Assembly (NCBI GenBank): GCA_965644265.1
Contig: OZ286477.1
Span: forward strand, 27,404,001-27,468,000
Source: Glycera tridactyla
Taxonomy: Eukaryota
Reading direction: 5' to 3'
DNA length: 64,000 nucleotides
Part shown: positions 30,420-40,712 of the stretch, piece after piece
Layout: each line of letters begins with the position of its first letter
How positions within the stretch are numbered: the stretch's first letter is position 1
Position numbers and translations under genes: made by a program
Notes under the pieces: model-generated
Seen by the model: the letters and a program-made list of their open reading frames with translations, nothing else
What the model was told of the DNA's origin: nothing
Databases searched by the model: none

Positions 30420-30803
30420 TGGCCAATGCGTGCTCAACTCCCCATAAAATAGGGATTGAATGGCTTAAGGCAATTATAGAAACTCTCCCCCTTTCCTTGG
30501 TTCCGGATTGGCTGAGAGAGCATGCGCACGCAGAGGTCCGTCGGTGCAGTGAGTAAGGTGAAGGGACCCCCTCCCCCTCTCTCCTACTTTAATGTATGCA
30601 GCGCAGCCTCGGCTCCGGATTCAGACGGCATCGAGGCTGCATGTGACACGGATACTTGACAGTTATTGGCACTCGCAGGTCACGTGGTACAGACAGGGGC
30701 CTCCGATAGTATTCGCTTCAATCCGACCGACATGCGCTAGAAGTAGGGAGTGCCTACAAATCATTGCTTAGTTAGGGGGTGCAAAAACATACAAGTTTTT
30801 ACT
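30420..30803 (+). promoter_or_regulatory. Putative Lox5 proximal promoter / 5'UTR
   Basis: CpG-rich stretch directly upstream of the ATG. It has CCAAT/ATTGG boxes (30423, 30507, 30665), a GCATGCGC NRF1-like motif (about 30520), the E-box GGTCACGTGG (30678-30687) and ACAAATCA (30756-63). The TSS cannot be determined. Confidence 0.6.
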
Positions 30804-31293
30804 ATGAGTTCCTACTACGCGAATCTTCTACCACCGGCGAATTTGCCCAATGGCGCCACGCAGGAGCATTTCATCGGGCATGAGAGAAAGTACGAAGGGA
30901 ACTTTTACGGGAGTACCGCGGGTGTTGGGTACGACACGGACGCCGGACAGCACCCGGGTTTCCCCCGTTTCCCACCCTACGATCGGCTCGATATCAACCC
31001 GATCACTTCGGTAGCCAAGGCTGGTTACACTACGTCACCTACAAGCCAGTATGCCAATACAGGACTTGCCTATGGTTCACAACAGACTGGACAATACACA
31101 CCGGACGATATGGTGCAATGTAAATTACCGGATGCCGGACTTGTGCCTGGGTCGACGCAACTACCTCAAAGTAACAACCCTGGTCAACCTGGTATGGTCA
31201 GTCCCTACACCACCAACAGTCTCCAGTCGATGGTGAATGGGTCCCAAGCTCAAAATATACCAATATACCCTTGGATGCGTCCCATGAATGGAG
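30804..31293 (+). CDS. Lox5: Hox gene Lox5, coding exon 1 (N-terminal domain and hexapeptide)
   Basis: ATG at 30804 gives MSSYYAN (SSYF-type N-terminus of central Hox proteins). It contains PRFPPYDR (30963-30986) and the IYPWMR hexapeptide (31263-31280). It ends at the donor GAG|GTAAGC (31293/31294), phase 1. Confidence 0.93.
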
Positions 31294-33524
31294 GTAAGCA
31301 CCAACTTTTCAACTTCCGCTTGTGTGCGTGTGAAAAAAAATGGTCATAAGTTGCACCTCTGGTTGTTTAGTGCAGATTTTATGTGTTGTTGATGTCCGCA
31401 CGGCCCCTTTAAGTGACCACTCACACTGACCCTCACACTGACCACTCATACACCCACACACGCATGCCTTCTTGACTTTATATGGGAACTTGTAACTTAT
31501 CATACACCTGTAGTGGGGGACACACGTGGCTTTGTTTTTGCTCTTGTTTATGTAATGACGTAGAGATTGTGTACAAGTTGTCCGCAAGGGCGAGCCCAGT
31601 ACAGGCGATGGTACATCATGGGCTGGCTGTGATGGGCAATAACCATTAAGCTCGGGCATCCCGGTGGCCATTTGTCAACATTGGTCGGGCAATTTATGTA
31701 CCTTCGACAGGCCGGGGTCAGAGAGTATATGCTCTGATCACAACATATGACAAACATCACCCAAATTTGGATCTTCTTTCAATTCAAACTTTTCCATCGT
31801 TTTTATCAATTTTCAATCATCTTCGACTTTGACGCATTCTCTGCTGCTTGCCAGTATTCGACTCAGAGGCTTTGCATTCACACCTTAGGCAAGAGTTCAT
31901 TGCTGTTACCATTACTCACTGCTCAGCACTGACTCAGAACAGAACTTCATGAGTCATGTCAATCATAAAAAGCTTGAATGGATGAGAATTGGAGAAATTG
32001 AAAATAAGACTTGATGACTTCTGGTAACTCATCTTCATCAGTTCTTCACCTACCTGAGATGTCATTGAGTATTGCTCTGAATATCTCATGACTTGTGATG
32101 AGACTTCAAATGTGGAGTGCCTTCCCACAAAGAACATAGGGGATATGAAAGCAAGAAGGCCCTAATCAAACACAAAGTCTTCCATTGGTTCTGCAATCAG
32201 AATATCTTTTTTTGGCAACTGGTTAGGGTGGATAAGTTTACTTCAAGTGTCAAAGAACTTGAGTTTCATTGTATTGTTTTGCTTGTTGTTCAGTAAGTCT
32301 TGATGTTGTCAAAACAGTTCCTTACTTATTGAGATCTGTATTGGCCTGTCTCTCTTCCTCTCCCTCTGTCTCTCTCAATCACTCCTCCCTTCCCTTGTTC
32401 TTGCTTTTGATCNNNNNNNNNNNNNNNNNNNNNNNNNNNNNNNNNNNNNNNNNNNNNNNNNNNNNNNNNNNNNNNNNNNNNNNNNNNNNNNNNNNNNNNN
32501 NNNNNNNNNNNNNNNNNNNNNNNNNNNNNNNNNNNNNNNNNNNNNNNNNNNNNNAGTAATATTTTCCATATCTATGGATTGTTTGTTGCATGACCACAAT
32601 CATGAACAAAAGGGCATCTGACACTTTGTCTGAAATGACACATGATGGTTGATTTTTTGTGGTGTACAGTCAACACAATATAAACATGCACGCATGTACA
32701 CCCACACATACATATATATGTTAAGCGTATGTGCCTGTTTAATAATGTATGAGCACCTCATATGCATAAAGTATCCGGTTGCATATCATTAGCCTCGTTA
32801 CCTTTACACTTAACTGTCATACTTATGTATACATTGTATGCCTACGCTGTTTTGACGTCATCATGAAGTTGTGACGTTATAACAACGCTAGTTTATCATT
32901 GAGATGACGTTACACAGGCATTCGACGTCATTTGGTTGCCTTAAGATGACTCAGTATCCACTGCCATCATTTCGAGAGCCAGCCTTCAACATCTTATAGT
33001 AGGTCGGTTCGCACAAACTTGATGGTTCCAACCCAAAGGTGTCAGAGATCACCTGGAAGGCCATATGGACTTGAACTAAAACACAGCTGTTGTAGTTCTT
33101 CCGAGGGTAAAGGGCAAACAGTGCAAAGGTGTATACACACTACGGCGTGAAATGAAGGTTAGATACCAGATGGTGAAGTGGGGTAAGATAGGAGATTGAT
33201 GGAGTTTAGAGTAGTTTGGCCGAAGCTGACCAGTAGAGTAGAGGCTGCGGGGGTGTCCGGGGGTTGGGAGAGACCGAGAGATGGATAGCTTTTCGCCGGT
33301 GGAGGGCTGCTTCATCGGGTGGTCAGCCATCATCAGTTGCGCTCTCGCGCCCCGCTAATGAATCATTAGTACCCCCTTCGACCTCATTTGATTCCCCTCT
33401 ACTGACCGGTACTAGTGACCACTTTTCAATGGGTCTATTCTGCATAGCACTCCTATAGCGTCAATTTCTCACCTAGCAAAGTCATCTCCATGGTAATGGG
33501 AAAGCCCACTCATGACATGTTTCT

Positions 33525-33840
33525 GTGCGTGTGTGTGTGTATGCGTGTTTGTTTTCGATGTGTGTGCCTGTGTATGTTCTTGTGCATTTGTGTCAGTGTG
33601 TGAATCTGTGTGTCTGTGCGTCTGTATGTCCGGGATATGCGTCTGTATGTCTGTCTGCCTGTCTATCTGCCTGTCTATCTGCCTGTCTATCTGCCTGTCC
33701 GTCAGCCTGTCCGTCTTTCTGTCAGCCTGTCTGTCTGCCTGTCTGTCTGTCTGTCTTTCTGTCTGTCTGTCTTTCTGTCAGCCTGTCTGCCTGTCAGCCT
33801 GTCAGCCTGTCCGACTGTCTGCCTATCTGCCTGTCTCAGT
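33525..33840. repeat. (GT)n / (CTGT)n compound microsatellite, intronic
   Basis: Direct inspection. It explains the ORFs at 33512-34071. Confidence 0.95.
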
Positions 33841-34149
33841 CTCTTTCCTCTTTCTCATTTTCATCGGCTGTTCCTTTCTCTGGCTCTTGTTTCTTCTGCA
33901 TGTCTCTATCCCCTTTCGTTTTTGTCCTTGTTTTTTTCTTTGGTTTCACTTCAACTCCCAACACTCTCGATTCATCCAGTCAAACTCATTGTAATCGAAA
34001 GAGGTATTGCTTCTCGCACATCTGAATGGAAAAAAGCTTTGGAAAGCGTATCACATTACTTGGAACCATGATTGGTACTCTGTAAAGCTTTGGACAACGT
34101 TGATCATAGCTACAGAATCTGAACAGTGGGAACCATTTATTTCACTGTG

Positions 34150-34900
34150 CAAACATTCCAGGTCTTCCGTCCTTGTGTATGGGTTTCACTAAAGAAAATG
34201 ACTAGCTGAATGCATGTCTGGCCTGTTTCGAGAATAGGGTGATTACAAGGACTATATTGAATGTCTGTATGAACAATGCATTTACCCAGAATATCTTGCA
34301 CTGCTTTTGCACTGAATGCGAACTAGAATACCCTTCAGAACAGTTATTCGGTGTTCACTTTCGATCAATCTATACATATGTCCACTCGCATCATTTGATA
34401 GATATGGAATTTGTTTAAGAATTATAACACATCAGTGAAACTATGTCATGTTGAATTATGACATAAACTGGCTGATGGTAGCTTCAAAACTATGTTCTGA
34501 GGAGTGGCTTGATAGAGGGCGCTGACAAATTGATTCCCATCGAAGTGGCCTGATCGACTGACCAAGGCAATCTGGCTCCACGCTGACCAGCGTCCAACCT
34601 TTCCCCCTCCTTGACCGGATACGCTTCGTTTCTGCCCATTTTGATTGGAGAGCGTATACCATTGTCCAGCTCATTGTTGGTTCCTTGTCATAGTTGTGCA
34701 TGGGGGCTGTGATGAACTGGATGGAATGGGCCACATCTCGAGTGCAACTGCATCAGGGAACTGACTGTGTTTATTGTTGCCCTCCGGCACTGTCACAGTT
34801 GCACAGTATCTGACCATTGACATAGAAATCATATATGCAAACCTCTTTATCCTCACATCTCAATTCACATCTCCGCTGAAAGAAACTTTGAAGAAAATTT
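34150..34900 (-). mobile_element. Highly decayed LINE reverse-transcriptase fragment
   Basis: Minus-strand remnants occur in the expected order: FYVN (IYIND), QFPD (LFADD), LDN-VYALQSKW (LDxLYxWSxKW), KCIVHTDIQYSP (KALVRPxLEYxSP). There are many stops and frameshifts. Confidence 0.35.
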
Positions 34901-37900
34901 CCGAAGTAATCATCTAGATGAAATTGTGATGCCAATGAGTATGATATCATGCAATAACTTTTCTTGGTCCTCATCGAGGAATGAGATTAATTGAAAAACA
35001 CACTTATTGTAATATCTGGGGATCATCCTGCAAGTTAACTGAGTTCATTGAAACTTAGTTCATTGAAAAGTCGAGGGCTTATATTGATTTTGACTAGACT
35101 ATAAGCACTGGCACGATAATCATGCATTTAGCCCATTGTCAAATACATATTTCTGAATCCAATATGTTAACATAGTCTAAGATGGCTTACCAGAAGTGAA
35201 ACTGGTGACTGGCCTTGATGAATTGAGTAGCTTAGAATGCAGTTCATCAATATATGATAAAATGAGGAAGGGCTTGAGCCTTGGTCCCACCAACAAGCTT
35301 TAGCGTTGAGGTATCTTTGATGGCAAGGCTCTTATCTGGCATGGGAATGAAAAGTAAAGATAGGCTTAGGCTGGTAAAGTTCATGTTCTACATATCAACA
35401 GAGTCTAGTCTAATAAAATTACTCATTGTGCATCCACGAACAGCTGCGTCCATGTAGTATATATGCGTTGGTGTTCTTCACAAGGTGTTTCTAATGACTT
35501 TGACACCAACTCACCTCATATAACATGCAGTGACCTTACACAGTACACAACAGCACTATATGAACTCCTTTACCCAGAGAGATCATGTAGGTGCTACATA
35601 TCATGTTGATTGCTGACTTGGCATCATATGTTTTGATGATCACACATTTCTCCATTTCTCCCTACATCACTCTCAGGTTTTCTCACTTTCCTTCCTTTTA
35701 TCTTATTCAAAAGATGCCAACCATCACCATTTTTGTGCGATAATCCCTGGTCTGAGGCAACATTTTGACATTTCACGCACGATATTTCTTCATGTAAATC
35801 ACATTTTCTGGTTCAGTTTTGTGCAAATATTACCATTATTATTCCTGAAATTACTTTTGTCCATTATCAAAGGTTGGCATAGCTGTCTTTCCCGCTCTAC
35901 AATCTCTCATCTGCCTCTCTTCTTTTCCTCTTATGTCCATTTCTTTCTGCATCTGCTTATTTCTGCCCTGTTCCCTGCATCTCCCATTATCTGCAATGCA
36001 ACTATTTCTGGCCTTGTTCCCCAGCGTACATTTGTAGGTCAAGAATTTATGAGGGCAGGCACCCCGCCTTCTACATGTAGCAGATTCGATCACTTCTCCA
36101 TGCTATGCACCATTTTCATCTCAGTTGCAACCTCATTCCCCTCACAATCAACAAGAGACTCGAATGCTAGCAAGTAGCCATCTCATACAAAAACAACTGT
36201 AGGAAATCAATGATGGTCAATATCCAGTCTGATTTCAGCATCCTACTAGCAGTTGAAGAAGCGTTGTCCAGCATCTCAGCAGCATTATATTTTCTTCTTC
36301 ATGGGAGGGGATACATTTGCGAAAAGTTACTATTCTGCTTTGGGGGATGAATGACCCTGATGCATGATGTGTTAACGTATGTCAATTCGTTTATGTTGAT
36401 TGATTCAGAGACATCTGTGAGATTAAACGAGAAACTTTGCCAATCCATCAGCATTTTATTGATCATTCCCGATCGATACTAGTCATTGATCCCTGGAGTC
36501 ATACAGAATCTAAAACCCGGAATTTATAGATTTCACCGATCACTCCAAATATCCTAAAATTGTATTGACATCATCAAATCAGCAAATTCATCAAACAAGT
36601 GGAGGCAAATGTCATCGATTGTAATAATATATGGTCCATAGATTTGGTATATGGGCGATTTTGTGGGGTTCGGTTGATTCAGCAAGGTTGGTCAATATGT
36701 GATGTGACCTCCATGCATTGTATGGATCAATCCAATCGTGTGTACCACTTTATGCCGGAAATTAGGTCAACTCCAATGCAAATAGAAAAGGGGCAGTGGA
36801 ATAAATGATGCATATGCAATGCATACTAACATGGGTCGGACCTATTGACCCTTGATGTCCATTGCTCGAATTATCCTATCGGAGTCAAGTCATTTGATGC
36901 AGAGTCTCCTTTTGGTAATTTCGACATACAGTGAGACTTGATCGGGTGGGACAATTGGAGATTACCAACGATCACTGTACATATAATTTTCAGTGATATT
37001 GATAATTTGGAAGATCGATTGATTGATTGATCGATTGATTGATTGATTGATTAGCTAACGTTCATCATCATGTATGGAACTATGCATTGCATATGTCTTG
37101 TTTCTCATATCATGAATGGATGCTGTGTCCCCTCCAGATATCTATCAGTCGAATCTTCAACACAAAATGCTGGGGATCCATGTTGTCTTATGCAAGAAGC
37201 TCACAGTTCAGACACACCTCTACAGCTTCTATATATAACTGGAAGTCCCTATTGAATAAGATATGCGCCTCGCTGATAACTGATTCTTAGGTCTGATGAA
37301 ATTAGTTCAAATCTTGGAAGATATTGTGAGTGGTTTGCACATTCCCAATACTGTGAAAGATGCCTCGGACAGAGCATCAAGCTGAGTCCATCGTAGGGAT
37401 CAGCTGACTTGACATGCCATTGACCTGCATTCTTCATCATTTGGAGGAGGGATAACAAAGATGTCAAGTATTACAGTCTGGGGGTAGTTTAGCATGGCCT
37501 AGACATGGCAGAGCCTCTAGCAGCCTCTCGGGTTTTTATGCTCTCCCCCAGCGATCTACAGCTACCGTAATGCCCCCATTCCAGTATCATGTCTGCGGGT
37601 ATTATCGTCCATAAAACGCCATGCTTACGAGAAAACACGTACAAACCGAAACCACCAAATCCACCGAATACGTACAAAATCATCAAATTAAGCATTCGAA
37701 TGTTGAATTCATTAGCTGGTTTTGTATTAAGTGTTATTTCATCATTGTTATGTGTTCAGAGGTGGAATTTGAGATGTTTGGAGCAGTAATATGGGGTGAT
37801 TATGAAGGTTGTTTAGGAATGATTTATCATTACTGGTGATCAGGGTGGTTGGTAGTGGTGGTGTAATGGTTTTGCACTGAGTTCACCTAGTCTCCCCGTC

Positions 37901-38492
37901 CTAGTTCCAACCAACAACAGATCATAAACACACTTCATGCCCTTAATGTGCCATAATGACACCTCCAAGTGGTGACCTCTACCTCGACAGCTATTAAATC
38001 ACAACCATCATTTGCCCCGCGATTCTCACTTCGCCCATGATGCACACACATCACATGTTTATTACCAGACTCATTCAGTTAGTAAATTACTTCCGTGTTA
38101 CTACTACATGAGTAGCAGATGCTTGCTTGTGGTATCCACAGTTGCTCACCAGCTTCTGTTCCTCGCTTGGGGGTGATAGCCGCATAGCATATGACCTTTA
38201 AAACACCATTTCACTCAATTTCCATACCTCTCCCACTCATAGCATGTGTTTCTAATGTTCAGTCTGTTCAGAATTCATTAAGAAAAAATAACGATGGATG
38301 GCTGCCACTCAAAGCTTACAAGCTCAAAATATTCAGATGTGAAATTTGAGATGGACGGACATGCCCTAAATTCCAGAATGAACCCCGAATCATTATGGTT
38401 TCACAAACCAGCACAAAAGTACTCGTGAAAAAACTCTCTGAACAGGCAGGGTCTATCTTTTTAATCATTGCGAATAGTGTCGTCATCACTCT

Positions 38493-39256
38493 GCAGAATT
38501 TCAATCATTACTATCTTTGGTCATCAGAGGTTGGCATCACTGAGTGTAGAAAATCAGCGAAATTTCGATCATTACTATCTTAGATCATCAGAGGTTGGCA
38601 TCACTGAGTGTAGAAAATCAGCAAAATTTCAATCATTACTATTTTTGATCATCAAAGGTTGGCATCCCTGAAAGTAGAAAATCAGCAAAGTTTCAATCAT
38701 TACTATCTTTGATCATCAGAGGATGGCATCCCTGAGAGTAGAAAATCAGCAGAATTTCAATCATTACTATCTTTGGTCATCAGAGGTTGGCATCCCTGTG
38801 AGTAGAAAATCAGCAAAATTGCAATCATCACTATCTTTGGTCATCAGAGGTTGGCATCCCTGTGAGTAGAAAATCAGCAAAATTGCAATCATTTCTATCT
38901 TTGGTCATCAGAAGTTGGCATCCCTGAGAGTGGAAAATCAGCAAAATTTCAATCATTTCTATCTTTGATCATCAGAGGTTGGCATCCCTGAGAGTAGAAA
39001 ATCAGCAAAATTGCAATCATTTCTATCTTTGGTCATCAGAGGTTGGCATCCCTGAGAGTAGAAAATCAGCAAAGTTTCAATCATTACTATCTTTGGTCAT
39101 CAGAGGTTGGCATCCCTGAGAGTGGAAAATCAGCAAAATTTCAATCATTTCTATCTTTGGTCATCAGAGGTTGGCATCCCTGAGAGTAGAAAATCAGCAA
39201 AGTTTCAATAATTACTATCTTTAGTCATCAGAGGTTGGCTGAGAGTAGAAAATCAT
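38493..39256. repeat. Minisatellite, about 12 x 64 bp, in Lox5 intron
   Basis: Unit AATCATTACTATCTTTGGTCATCAGAGGTTGGCATCCCTGAGAGTAGAAAATCAGCAAAATTTC recurs at an exact 64-bp period (38503, 38567, 38631 ... 39207), with scattered substitutions. Confidence 0.97.
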
Positions 39257-40034
39257 CATTCTCATCTCGGAATAGTGACCTATGGCTATTCATGAGGGGA
39301 AAGTGAGCAATGAAACACTTGCTTTTTGAGCAGTAAAAAAATGGAGTTGACTGACTTGCACCCAGGATTTACTGGCCTCCAGTCGGTGTTAGTTTCACAC
39401 ACTTAATGTGAGTTAATGCATTGAAAGGGTCTTAGATTTTAGAAAGGAAAGCGTGGGATAGCACCTACTTGACGACCATGTTTGCACTGGACCGATGACA
39501 ACCTGTCGGTCATTGACCTTTCGCTGATCAGCTGACCTTTGTTTCAACACTGCGGCCGGACGCAAATAGGCAGATCATTGCGCTGTGCGGCGGTCATTGT
39601 GGAGTTCACACTGCGGCCAGACTGTATCCAAACACTTGCCACAATAAAACACTTGTCAACTGTGATAATTGTGCACACATTGCCGACCTTGCCGCAATAA
39701 ACATCTCGAACCCTCGAGTAATTTCCCTGAACAGAAGCATGCAATTGAAGTAGAGTGACTTGTTTCAAGGATCCTGAAAATTGCGATAGAATAAAGACAT
39801 AGAAATAGAAATATCGGCCAAAATTTGCGATTCAAGAAAGAAATTTACATATGAGACGAACATTCAACTTGCATTGAAGAAATATTTCCAGAGGTTCTGG
39901 TTCCATTGCATCGATCTCATGAATTTCTTCTATTCTGAGTTGAGATGAAGTTTTCGATCATTAACTTTTCGAAGTAGTACGTGTGCTTCCACTGTATGCC
40001 GGTACAGGTATGTCTGAACTGACAGCTACTTCCA

Positions 40035-40100
40035 CACCACAACCTTTTCTGTTCTCCATCAACTGGTCTTTAGGGTTTGTGAGAGTGATGCCTACAGGGA
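40035..40100 (-). repeat. Dispersed repeat family C, copy 1 (others at 42055-42120 on + and 55380-55440 on -)
   Basis: Shared core GG(C/T)ATCACTC(T/A)CACAAA(C/T)CCT(A/G)AA...GATGG...AAC, seen in three places. It is probably a remnant of an old retroelement, but the family is not identified. Confidence 0.6.
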
Positions 40101-40624
40101 ATAGATCATCCCGCTTTCACTGACAAGAGACAAACGGCATACATGATCCTCTTGGTTGCTACATGCCATTGAACGTCAATCAATTGATCACACACACGCA
40201 CACGTGCGTGCATGCATCTCGTCTCGTGTTATGGTCTATATCTGAGGGACTGTCTGATAGGTTGATACGGAAGGGATCACAGCTATAACAGGCTGTTGCA
40301 GGCCTCCTGTCCATTATACCTTATATGAACCATATGTGGATCACATGTGACCTATATATACGGACACATGCAAGCCATCAATACATCTGGACCATGTTAG
40401 ACCCAGTAATTGACTGATTTATAGATTCTTAATGACCCATCCTTCCTGACCTCGACTTCTATGAACTGTCAATAACAGCTATACCAACCGTTATCATTTC
40501 GTGCGCTGATGGTCTAATTTGTATATTACTTTACTTCAAACAGTGCTTGCTTGTTTCACAATATGATATCGATATCAAATATGATGAAACTTTGCATACG
40601 GGGATTAAAAGGATGATACTGCTA

Positions 40625-40636
40625 TGATGGTAATAA

Positions 40637-40668
<32 letters not shown>

Positions 40669-40712
40669 ATGGAAGTAGTGATGATAATAACGATAATGAT
40701 GATGATAACGAT
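40625..40712. repeat. (GAT)n microsatellite
   Basis: Direct inspection. Confidence 0.9.

What the first reader, a model, noticed from the sequence alone, without database searches (positions are those of the whole stretch)
38493..39256. Intronic 64-bp minisatellite appears to be amplified from the end of a local MITE
Seen: about 47 bp of each unit (AAATTTCAATCATTACTATCTTTGGTCATCAGAGGTTGGCATCCCTG) match the reverse complement of the left end of the family A MITE at 59495-59541 (AAATTTGCACTGCTACTATTTCTGTCCATCAGAGGTTGGCATC). The match includes the terminal inverted repeat and a 17-bp identical stretch, CATCAGAGGTTGGCATC. Inference: one transposon terminus was tandemly amplified about 12-fold inside a Hox intron, producing an array of transposase-end motifs. 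This is satellite birth from a MITE, with the progenitor family still present nearby. It could vary in length between alleles and affect Lox5 regulation or local chromatin.
Basis: partly seen in the sequence, partly recalled or inferred. Interest (0 to 1): 0.7.

Follow-up and report, generated by a model that had tools for sequence, protein, structure and literature searches.

The report
Minisatellite grown from a MITE end
A 0.76-kb run of twelve 64-base repeats in the intron of the Hox gene Lox5 was made by repeatedly duplicating, on the spot, the last 49 bases of a small resident transposon plus about 15 bases of the DNA next to it. It is a clean but ordinary example of tandem repeats born from a transposon.

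Summary
Tandem Repeats Finder gives 38493-39239, period 64, 11.7 copies, 92% matches. Read in register there are 11 full units and a 12th with a 5-bp deletion, ending at 39255.

A profile built from 30 independent genome copies of the MITE matches every unit over its last 48-49 positions, including the terminal base (E 2.6e-9 to 4.5e-7). Shuffle tests agree (0 of 5000).

The family is a real cut-and-paste MITE: 188 bp, inverted ends, a 6-bp target-site duplication, and thousands of copies.

The reading needs three refinements:
- The parent is not the copy at 59495 but a degenerate copy in place (38430-38542). Its right end is the first unit.
- Each unit is the MITE end plus 15-16 nt that resemble no part of the MITE and run on into single-copy flank. 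The duplicated segment therefore spanned the junction between element and flank.
- The 64-mer junction occurs nowhere else in the 2.04-Gb genome. This is a locus-specific minisatellite, not a satellite family.

Four other loci carry arrays (periods 16, 32, 32 and about 33 bp) grown from the same 3' region of this MITE, but inside the element. The array lies in the 16.3-kb Lox5 intron.

Function and allelic variation could not be tested. This is a known kind of event, of modest interest.

The parts
38493..39255 (+). 64-bp tandem array: 11 full units plus a 12th unit with a 5-bp deletion (the ATCCC of the terminus is missing)
   Evidence: TRF period 64, 11.7 copies, 92%; units printed in register, 1-6 differences each from the array consensus
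38430..38542 (+). Resident degenerate MITE copy (profile positions 77-188). Its last 49 nt are the MITE part of unit 1. The left half of the element is not detectable.
   Evidence: nhmmer E 1.3e-17, 59.6 bits; 82/111 identical to the consensus; 38330-38430 is no better than shuffles
38814..38862 (+). Example of the MITE-derived part of a unit: profile positions 140-188, ending at the true element terminus ...GGTTGGCATCCCTG
   Evidence: nhmmer E 2.6e-9. In 21 dispersed copies homology stops exactly after CCTG.
38863..38877 (+). Example of the 15-16-nt non-MITE spacer of a unit (consensus AGAGTAGAAAATCAG[C]). It is former flanking DNA, and its first 6 nt would be the target-site copy.
   Evidence: No similarity to the MITE consensus beyond shuffles (z -0.2). 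The same 14 nt after the last unit run straight into single-copy DNA.
39256..39289 (+). Unique right flank that continues from the last spacer
   Evidence: The 34-mer spanning spacer and flank occurs once in the genome at up to 3 mismatches
30801..31293 (+). Lox5 exon 1 (Met to hexapeptide IYPWM; donor GGAG|GTAAGC)
   Evidence: exon-1 relatives in annelid-type sources
31294..47577 (+). Lox5 intron (16,284 bp) that holds the array
   Evidence: Donor and acceptor read directly
47578..47969 (+). Lox5 exon 2: homeodomain plus the KLTGP parapeptide at homeodomain positions 64-68
   Evidence: Pfam Homeodomain E 9.5e-24; the KLTGP motif defines Lox5 (PMC5431905); sequence
59495..59682 (-).
   Evidence: nhmmer E 6e-31
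35709..35885 (+).
   Evidence: nhmmer E 1.9e-20
41461..41644 (+). MITE copy
   Evidence: nhmmer E 1.3e-14
41672..41865 (+). MITE copy
   Evidence: nhmmer E 1.4e-12
1932..2113 (-). MITE copy
   Evidence: nhmmer E 1.6e-12

Best explanation
A copy of an abundant 188-bp MITE inserted long ago into the Lox5 intron and decayed. The family has ends CAGAGATGCCAACC...GGTTGGCATC[C/T]CTG and a 6-bp target-site duplication.

Later, a 64-bp segment was duplicated in tandem at that spot. It consisted of the last 49 bp of this copy, true terminus included, plus the first 15 or so bp of adjacent host DNA. No microhomology is visible at the junction. The first duplication was therefore probably a template switch or an end-joining event (inferred).

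Once two copies existed, slippage or unequal exchange between misaligned units expanded the array to 12 units. This is the standard route of minisatellite growth (inferred). A two-unit pattern at the right end and more diverged edge units fit it.

The result is a locus-specific minisatellite. It carries 12 copies of the element's terminal inverted repeat and one subterminal ATCATTACT-type motif per unit. It is most likely neutral intronic DNA.

The same 3' region of this MITE family, which holds short direct repeats, has expanded separately at four or more other loci.
For: - Every unit matches profile positions 140/141-188 of a profile built only from copies elsewhere in the genome. Shuffle tests: 0 of 5000.
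- In 21 dispersed copies homology ends exactly after CCTG, which each unit contains in its interior.
- The family is a true MITE. The 6-bp target-site duplication is perfect in 18 of 30 copies and at least 5/6 in 24 of 30, against 0 of 30 in the mismatched-pair control. There were 3391 or more first-look candidates, and 40 scored copies were essentially all full length.
- Unit 1 is contiguous with 63 more bases of MITE body to its left.
- The last unit's spacer runs into single-copy DNA.
- The spacer and the right flank show no MITE similarity.
- All 11 full units share bases that are rare among 49 dispersed copies: positions 1, 9, 10 and 22 at 2, 5, 2 and 4 of 49. So they descend from one copy.
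- The 35-nt junction has 10 hits in 2.04 Gb, all inside this array. The 192-nt query finds no other array at 89% identity or more.
- Other loci carry arrays of the same MITE region: 32 bp x 33, 32 bp x 15, 16 bp x 13, about 33 bp x 7. All are confirmed as this MITE by nhmmer.
Against: - The left half of the resident copy cannot be recognised. Its left target-site copy therefore cannot confirm that the spacer's first 6 nt are the target-site duplication.
- No read data or second assembly was available, so assembly error in copy number is not excluded.
- The mechanism of the first duplication is inferred only.
- The genome DNA search scores only the best candidates, so a very diverged second 64-bp array could have been missed.
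Confidence: 0.85

Rival explanations
1. The 64-mer is an independent, genome-wide satellite that only resembles the MITE end by chance or by shared low complexity.
For: None found. The period (64) is twice that of two MITE-derived 32-bp arrays elsewhere, which could hint at a shared repeat family.
Against: The alignment is far above shuffles and profile E-values are 1e-7 to 1e-9 per unit. The junction is found only in this array. The half of the unit outside the MITE match has no similarity to the MITE or to the 32-bp units.
Confidence: 0.01
2. The array was formed inside a MITE variant (a tandem-repeat-containing MITE) elsewhere and arrived here by transposition.
For: Four other loci show arrays lying inside copies of this family, followed by the normal terminus. 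Such composite MITEs are known (PMC3879986).
Against: Here each unit contains the element's terminal CCTG followed by 15-16 nt of non-element DNA that is continuous with unique flank. An array that includes the terminus and host flank cannot have been carried between the element's ends. The junction is unique in the genome.
Confidence: 0.03
3. Repeated insertions of the MITE, or of fragments of it, into the same site produced the periodic structure.
For: The family is abundant and the window holds six or more copies. Two copies sit side by side at 41461-41865.
Against: All units begin at the same internal position (profile 140/141). They share the same spacer and the same rare substitutions. 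No target-site duplications separate the units.
Confidence: 0.01
4. The copy number, or the array itself, is an assembly artefact.
For: The window has ten N runs, so the assembly is not gapless. No reads could be laid.
Against: No N lies in or next to the array. Each unit has its own combination of 1-6 substitutions, and the edges join cleanly to MITE body and unique flank. That is not what a collapsed or stuttered assembly gives.
Confidence: 0.04
5. The first duplication was caused by transposase cutting at the MITE end, followed by faulty repair, rather than by replication slippage or exchange.
For: The array sits at a transposon terminus. The same family's 3' region is array-prone at four or more other loci.
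Against: Neither breakpoint of the 64-bp unit lies at the terminus: one is 49 bp inside the element and the other about 15 bp outside it. The resident copy is old (74% to the consensus) and lacks a recognisable left end, so it was probably immobile.
Confidence: 0.06

Closest known systems
Tandem-repeat-containing MITEs (DTC84 of the clam Donax trunculus; pearl elements of oysters), PMC3879986
   Same: A short non-autonomous DNA transposon is physically linked to a short array of tandem repeats with variable copy number. The four other loci found here (periods 16, 32, 32 and about 33 bp) have this layout, with the array inside the element and the normal terminus after it.
   Different: In the window the repeat unit contains the element's very end plus host flank. 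The array is therefore outside the mobile unit, fixed to this locus, and not a module of the family.
MITE-to-tandem-array transitions in Xenopus (Xstir; miDNA4), as reviewed in PMC12628747
   Same: Tandem repeats are derived from MITE sequence. Short direct repeats within the element are proposed to drive the expansion. That matches the TTGGCATC repeat, 32 bp apart in this MITE's end, which forms the junction of both 32-bp arrays.
   Different: Those arrays derive from internal MITE sequence or from a captured repeat, and occur at many loci. The window's unit has no microhomology at its junction and occurs at a single locus.
Tetris foldback transposon and its derived satellite in Drosophila virilis, PMC4079207
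   Same: Terminal-inverted-repeat sequence of a DNA transposon serves as the building block of tandem repeats.
   Different: Tetris ends are themselves built of tandem repeats and gave a genome-scale satellite. Here a plain MITE end made one 0.76-kb array.
Ordinary minisatellites (tandem duplication followed by unequal exchange or slippage)
   Same: Unit length of tens of bp, about a dozen copies, 92% similarity, edge units more diverged, non-coding location.
   Different: Only that the seed sequence can be traced to a transposon terminus and its flank.

Membership tests
MITE (non-autonomous cut-and-paste DNA transposon) | Terminal inverted repeats | tested here: met
   CAGAGATGCCAACC at the left end, GGTTGGCATC[C/T]CTG at the right end, in 30 aligned copies
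MITE (non-autonomous cut-and-paste DNA transposon) | Target-site duplication of fixed length flanking each copy | tested here: met
   6 bp; perfect in 18 of 30 copies, at least 5/6 in 24 of 30; mismatched-pair control 0 of 30 at 5/6 or better
MITE (non-autonomous cut-and-paste DNA transposon) | Small, non-coding, high copy number | tested here: met
   188 bp; 3391 or more first-look candidates; 40 scored copies essentially all full length at 80-85% identity
MITE (non-autonomous cut-and-paste DNA transposon) | Autonomous partner with the same ends | not tested
hAT superfamily | 8-bp target-site duplication | tested here: not met
   The target-site duplication is 6 bp. The CAG[A/G]GATG terminus resembles hAT ends only from memory, so the superfamily is left unassigned.
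hAT superfamily | hAT transposase encoded by a longer element with these ends | not tested
   149 or more matches to the hAT dimerisation domain exist in the genome, but none could be linked to this MITE
TE-derived tandem repeat | Repeat unit homologous to a transposon, and array contiguous with a parent copy | tested here: met
   units match profile positions 140-188, and unit 1 continues into MITE body
Tandem-repeat-containing MITE (array as internal module of the mobile element) | Array lies between the two element ends | tested here: not met
   For the window array, the terminus and host flank lie inside every unit. The feature is met structurally at four other loci.
Satellite DNA in the strict sense | Long arrays and/or many loci of the same monomer | tested here: not met
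   One 763-bp array; the junction is found nowhere else in 2.04 Gb
Lox5 (lophotrochozoan central Hox gene) | Homeodomain followed by the KLTGP parapeptide at positions 64-68; hexapeptide upstream | tested here: met
   motif definition from PMC5431905

The most novel reading that the evidence does not exclude
The twelve tandem copies of the MITE terminus are not neutral. Each carries the inverted repeat and a subterminal ATCATTACT-type motif. They might act in the Lox5 intron as a cluster of protein-binding sites or as a small-RNA or chromatin target, with a copy number that varies between individuals and modulates Lox5 expression. More broadly, the 3' end of this MITE family may be an intrinsic seed for tandem arrays across the genome.
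Probability: 0.04. Interest if true: 0.6.

Novelty: new member of a known kind. Interest (0 to 1): 0.27.

Why it matters
This is an unusually legible record of how a minisatellite starts. The parent transposon copy, the exact duplicated segment (element end plus flank), both outer junctions and the unduplicated flank can all still be read.

Together with four sister loci, it shows one MITE family repeatedly seeding arrays of different period. That supports the view that transposon ends are common raw material for tandem repeats.

Its position in a Hox intron would matter only if copy number turned out to vary and to affect Lox5. Nothing here shows that.

Tried and rejected
- A strict 24-nt search for a long inverted terminus found nothing. 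The inverted repeat is only about 14 nt; alignment of the flanks solved this.
- A first target-site-duplication count using fuzzy matching was off by 2 bp and looked negative. It was redone from alignment columns.
- I tested whether the 16-nt spacer or the right flank derive from MITE sequence (for example a second, inverted copy, or a decayed 32-bp half-unit). Neither is above shuffles.
- I tested whether 38330-38430 is the missing left half of the resident copy. It is not significant by local score, ungapped identity or global alignment.
- An imperfect AAAAT..CATCATT similarity between the unit start and the right flank was considered as the slippage substrate. It was rejected because the two motifs lie 52 bp apart, not 64.
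- A DNA fold of a unit dimer shows no unusual hairpin (z -1.27).
- Rfam gives no match in the window.
- A 32-bp array on contig C17 that shares the CATCATTACT word is not MITE-derived: no nhmmer hit.
- ARAGORN finds no tRNA in the insert that interrupts the C10 array.
- Sequencing runs: none was listed.
- The two Lox5 exons were searched separately by reference. The joined protein was not built or searched.

Full report
**The array.** Tandem Repeats Finder reports one strong array at 38493-39239: period 64, 11.7 copies, 92% matches, no indels, score 1249. Written in register from 38493/38494, it has 11 full units and a 12th that lacks 5 bases of the terminus and ends at 39255. After that the sequence is unrelated. 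Units differ from the array consensus by 1-6 of 64 bases. The two leftmost units are the most diverged. Alternating variants in the last four units suggest one two-unit (128-bp) duplication.

**The MITE family.**
- A genome search with three array units returned this array, one distant array, and about 45 single hits of 40-60 bp at 85-97% identity.
- Oriented and aligned, 21 of these hits share sequence up to ...GGTTGGCATCCCTG and diverge immediately after it.
- A full copy used as query gave 3391 first-look candidates. The 40 that were scored were essentially all full length.
- Thirty of them, none from the window, gave a 188-bp consensus with ends CAGAGATGCCAACC and GGTTGGCATC[C/T]CTG.
- Their flanks carry a 6-bp direct duplication: perfect in 18 of 30 and at least 5 of 6 in 24 of 30. 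When left and right flanks of different copies are paired, none reaches 5 of 6.
- This is therefore a genuine cut-and-paste MITE. The superfamily is left open. The terminus looks hAT-like from memory, but the 6-bp duplication does not fit the usual 8 bp, and the search for an autonomous partner could not be finished.

**Link between unit and MITE.**
- It matches each of the 11 full units at profile positions 140/141-188, through the last base of the element, with E 2.6e-9 to 4.5e-7. The 12th, shortened unit matches positions 142-181 (E 8.9e-4).
In both tests 0 of 5000 shuffles reach the observed score.

**Where the array came from.**
- The profile hit that contains unit 1 extends left to 38430 (profile positions 77-188, E 1.3e-17). 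The array thus begins inside a resident copy of the MITE. That copy is old, 74% identical to the consensus. Its left half cannot be recognised.
- The 15-16 nt of each unit that follow CCTG show no similarity to the MITE (z -0.2).
- After the last unit the same 14 nt continue into DNA that occurs once in the genome.
- The 35-nt junction of terminus, spacer and next unit has 10 matches at up to 3 mismatches in 2.04 Gb, all inside this array. The second refutation criterion is not met either.
- All 11 full units share bases that are rare among 49 dispersed copies (2, 5, 2 and 4 of 49 at four positions). They therefore descend from one copy.
- The simplest history is this. A 64-bp segment running from 49 bp inside the element to about 15 bp outside it was duplicated in place, and the pair then expanded.
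- The junction shows no microhomology. Neither breakpoint lies at the transposase cut site, which argues against a transposition by-product. The first step is inferred, not shown.

**Sister loci.** The distant array on contig C10 is a copy of the same MITE whose end is expanded as 33 units of 32 bp. The units are joined at an 8-nt direct repeat (TTGGCATC) that occurs twice, 32 bp apart, in the normal element end. The normal terminus follows the array. Three further loci are of the same kind:
- C1: 32 bp x 15.
- C31: 16 bp x 13.
- C11: about 33 bp x 7.

All four are confirmed as this family by nhmmer. They resemble the known tandem-repeat-containing MITEs. The window array differs in that its unit includes the terminus and host DNA. 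A 32-bp array on C17 that shares a 10-nt word is unrelated.

**Gene context.**
- The plus strand encodes a Hox protein. Exon 1 carries the IYPWM hexapeptide.
- Exon 2 carries a homeodomain (Pfam E 9.5e-24) followed by KLTGP at positions 64-68. A published comparison gives this motif as the Lox5 signature (PMC5431905).
- Donor and acceptor sites put the intron at 31294-47577, so the array lies 7.2 kb into it.
- The exons were searched separately by reference; the joined protein was not made.
- Exon-1 relatives reach only 60% identity. The one named hit is from the annelid Paralvinella palmiformis. No close relative was available for comparing introns.

**Comparison with what is known.** Reviews describe tandem repeats arising from transposon parts, including terminal inverted repeats and MITEs, and expansion driven by short direct repeats (PMC12628747; PMC3879986; PMC4079207). 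This case belongs to that class. Its particular points are a readable parent copy, a unit that spans the element/flank junction, and a family with several independent arrays.

**Limits.**
- No sequencing run was listed, so copy number, allelic variation and transcription are untested.
- No fold or RNA-family signal was found.
- Any regulatory role is speculation.

Noticed in passing
window 35709-35885: A further copy of the same MITE family in the Lox5 intron (nhmmer E 1.9e-20).
   Followed up: partly
window 26427-26481 and 26597-26676: Two collinear partial matches to the MITE profile (positions 3-57 and 104-183) about 115 bp apart. This may be a copy with an internal insertion or replacement.
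   Followed up: no
window 41461-41865: Two MITE copies in the same orientation about 30 bp apart, embedded in a (TTGG)n-type microsatellite. They are only 68% identical to each other, so they are separate insertions rather than a duplication.
   Followed up: partly
L006:1290-1460 (G000:C10, about 56.5277 Mb): The 32-bp MITE-end array is interrupted by an unrelated insert of about 170 bp. By eye, its reverse strand has tRNA-like A-box and B-box motifs (a possible SINE head), but ARAGORN calls no tRNA.
   Followed up: partly
L074:815-1130 (G000:C17, about 39.7382 Mb): A 32-bp tandem array that shares the word CATCATTACT with the MITE but has no profile match to it. Origin unknown.
   Followed up: partly
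window 40029-40119 and 55366-55456: A 91-nt direct repeat, 77% identical, 15.3 kb apart, one copy in the Lox5 intron and one downstream of the gene. Nature not examined.
   Followed up: no
window 14702-14900: A second minisatellite: 51-bp unit, 3.9 copies, 91% matches.
   Followed up: no
window 27747-28055: A long (GACT)n microsatellite of about 77 copies, upstream of Lox5 exon 1 and next to an N run.
   Followed up: no
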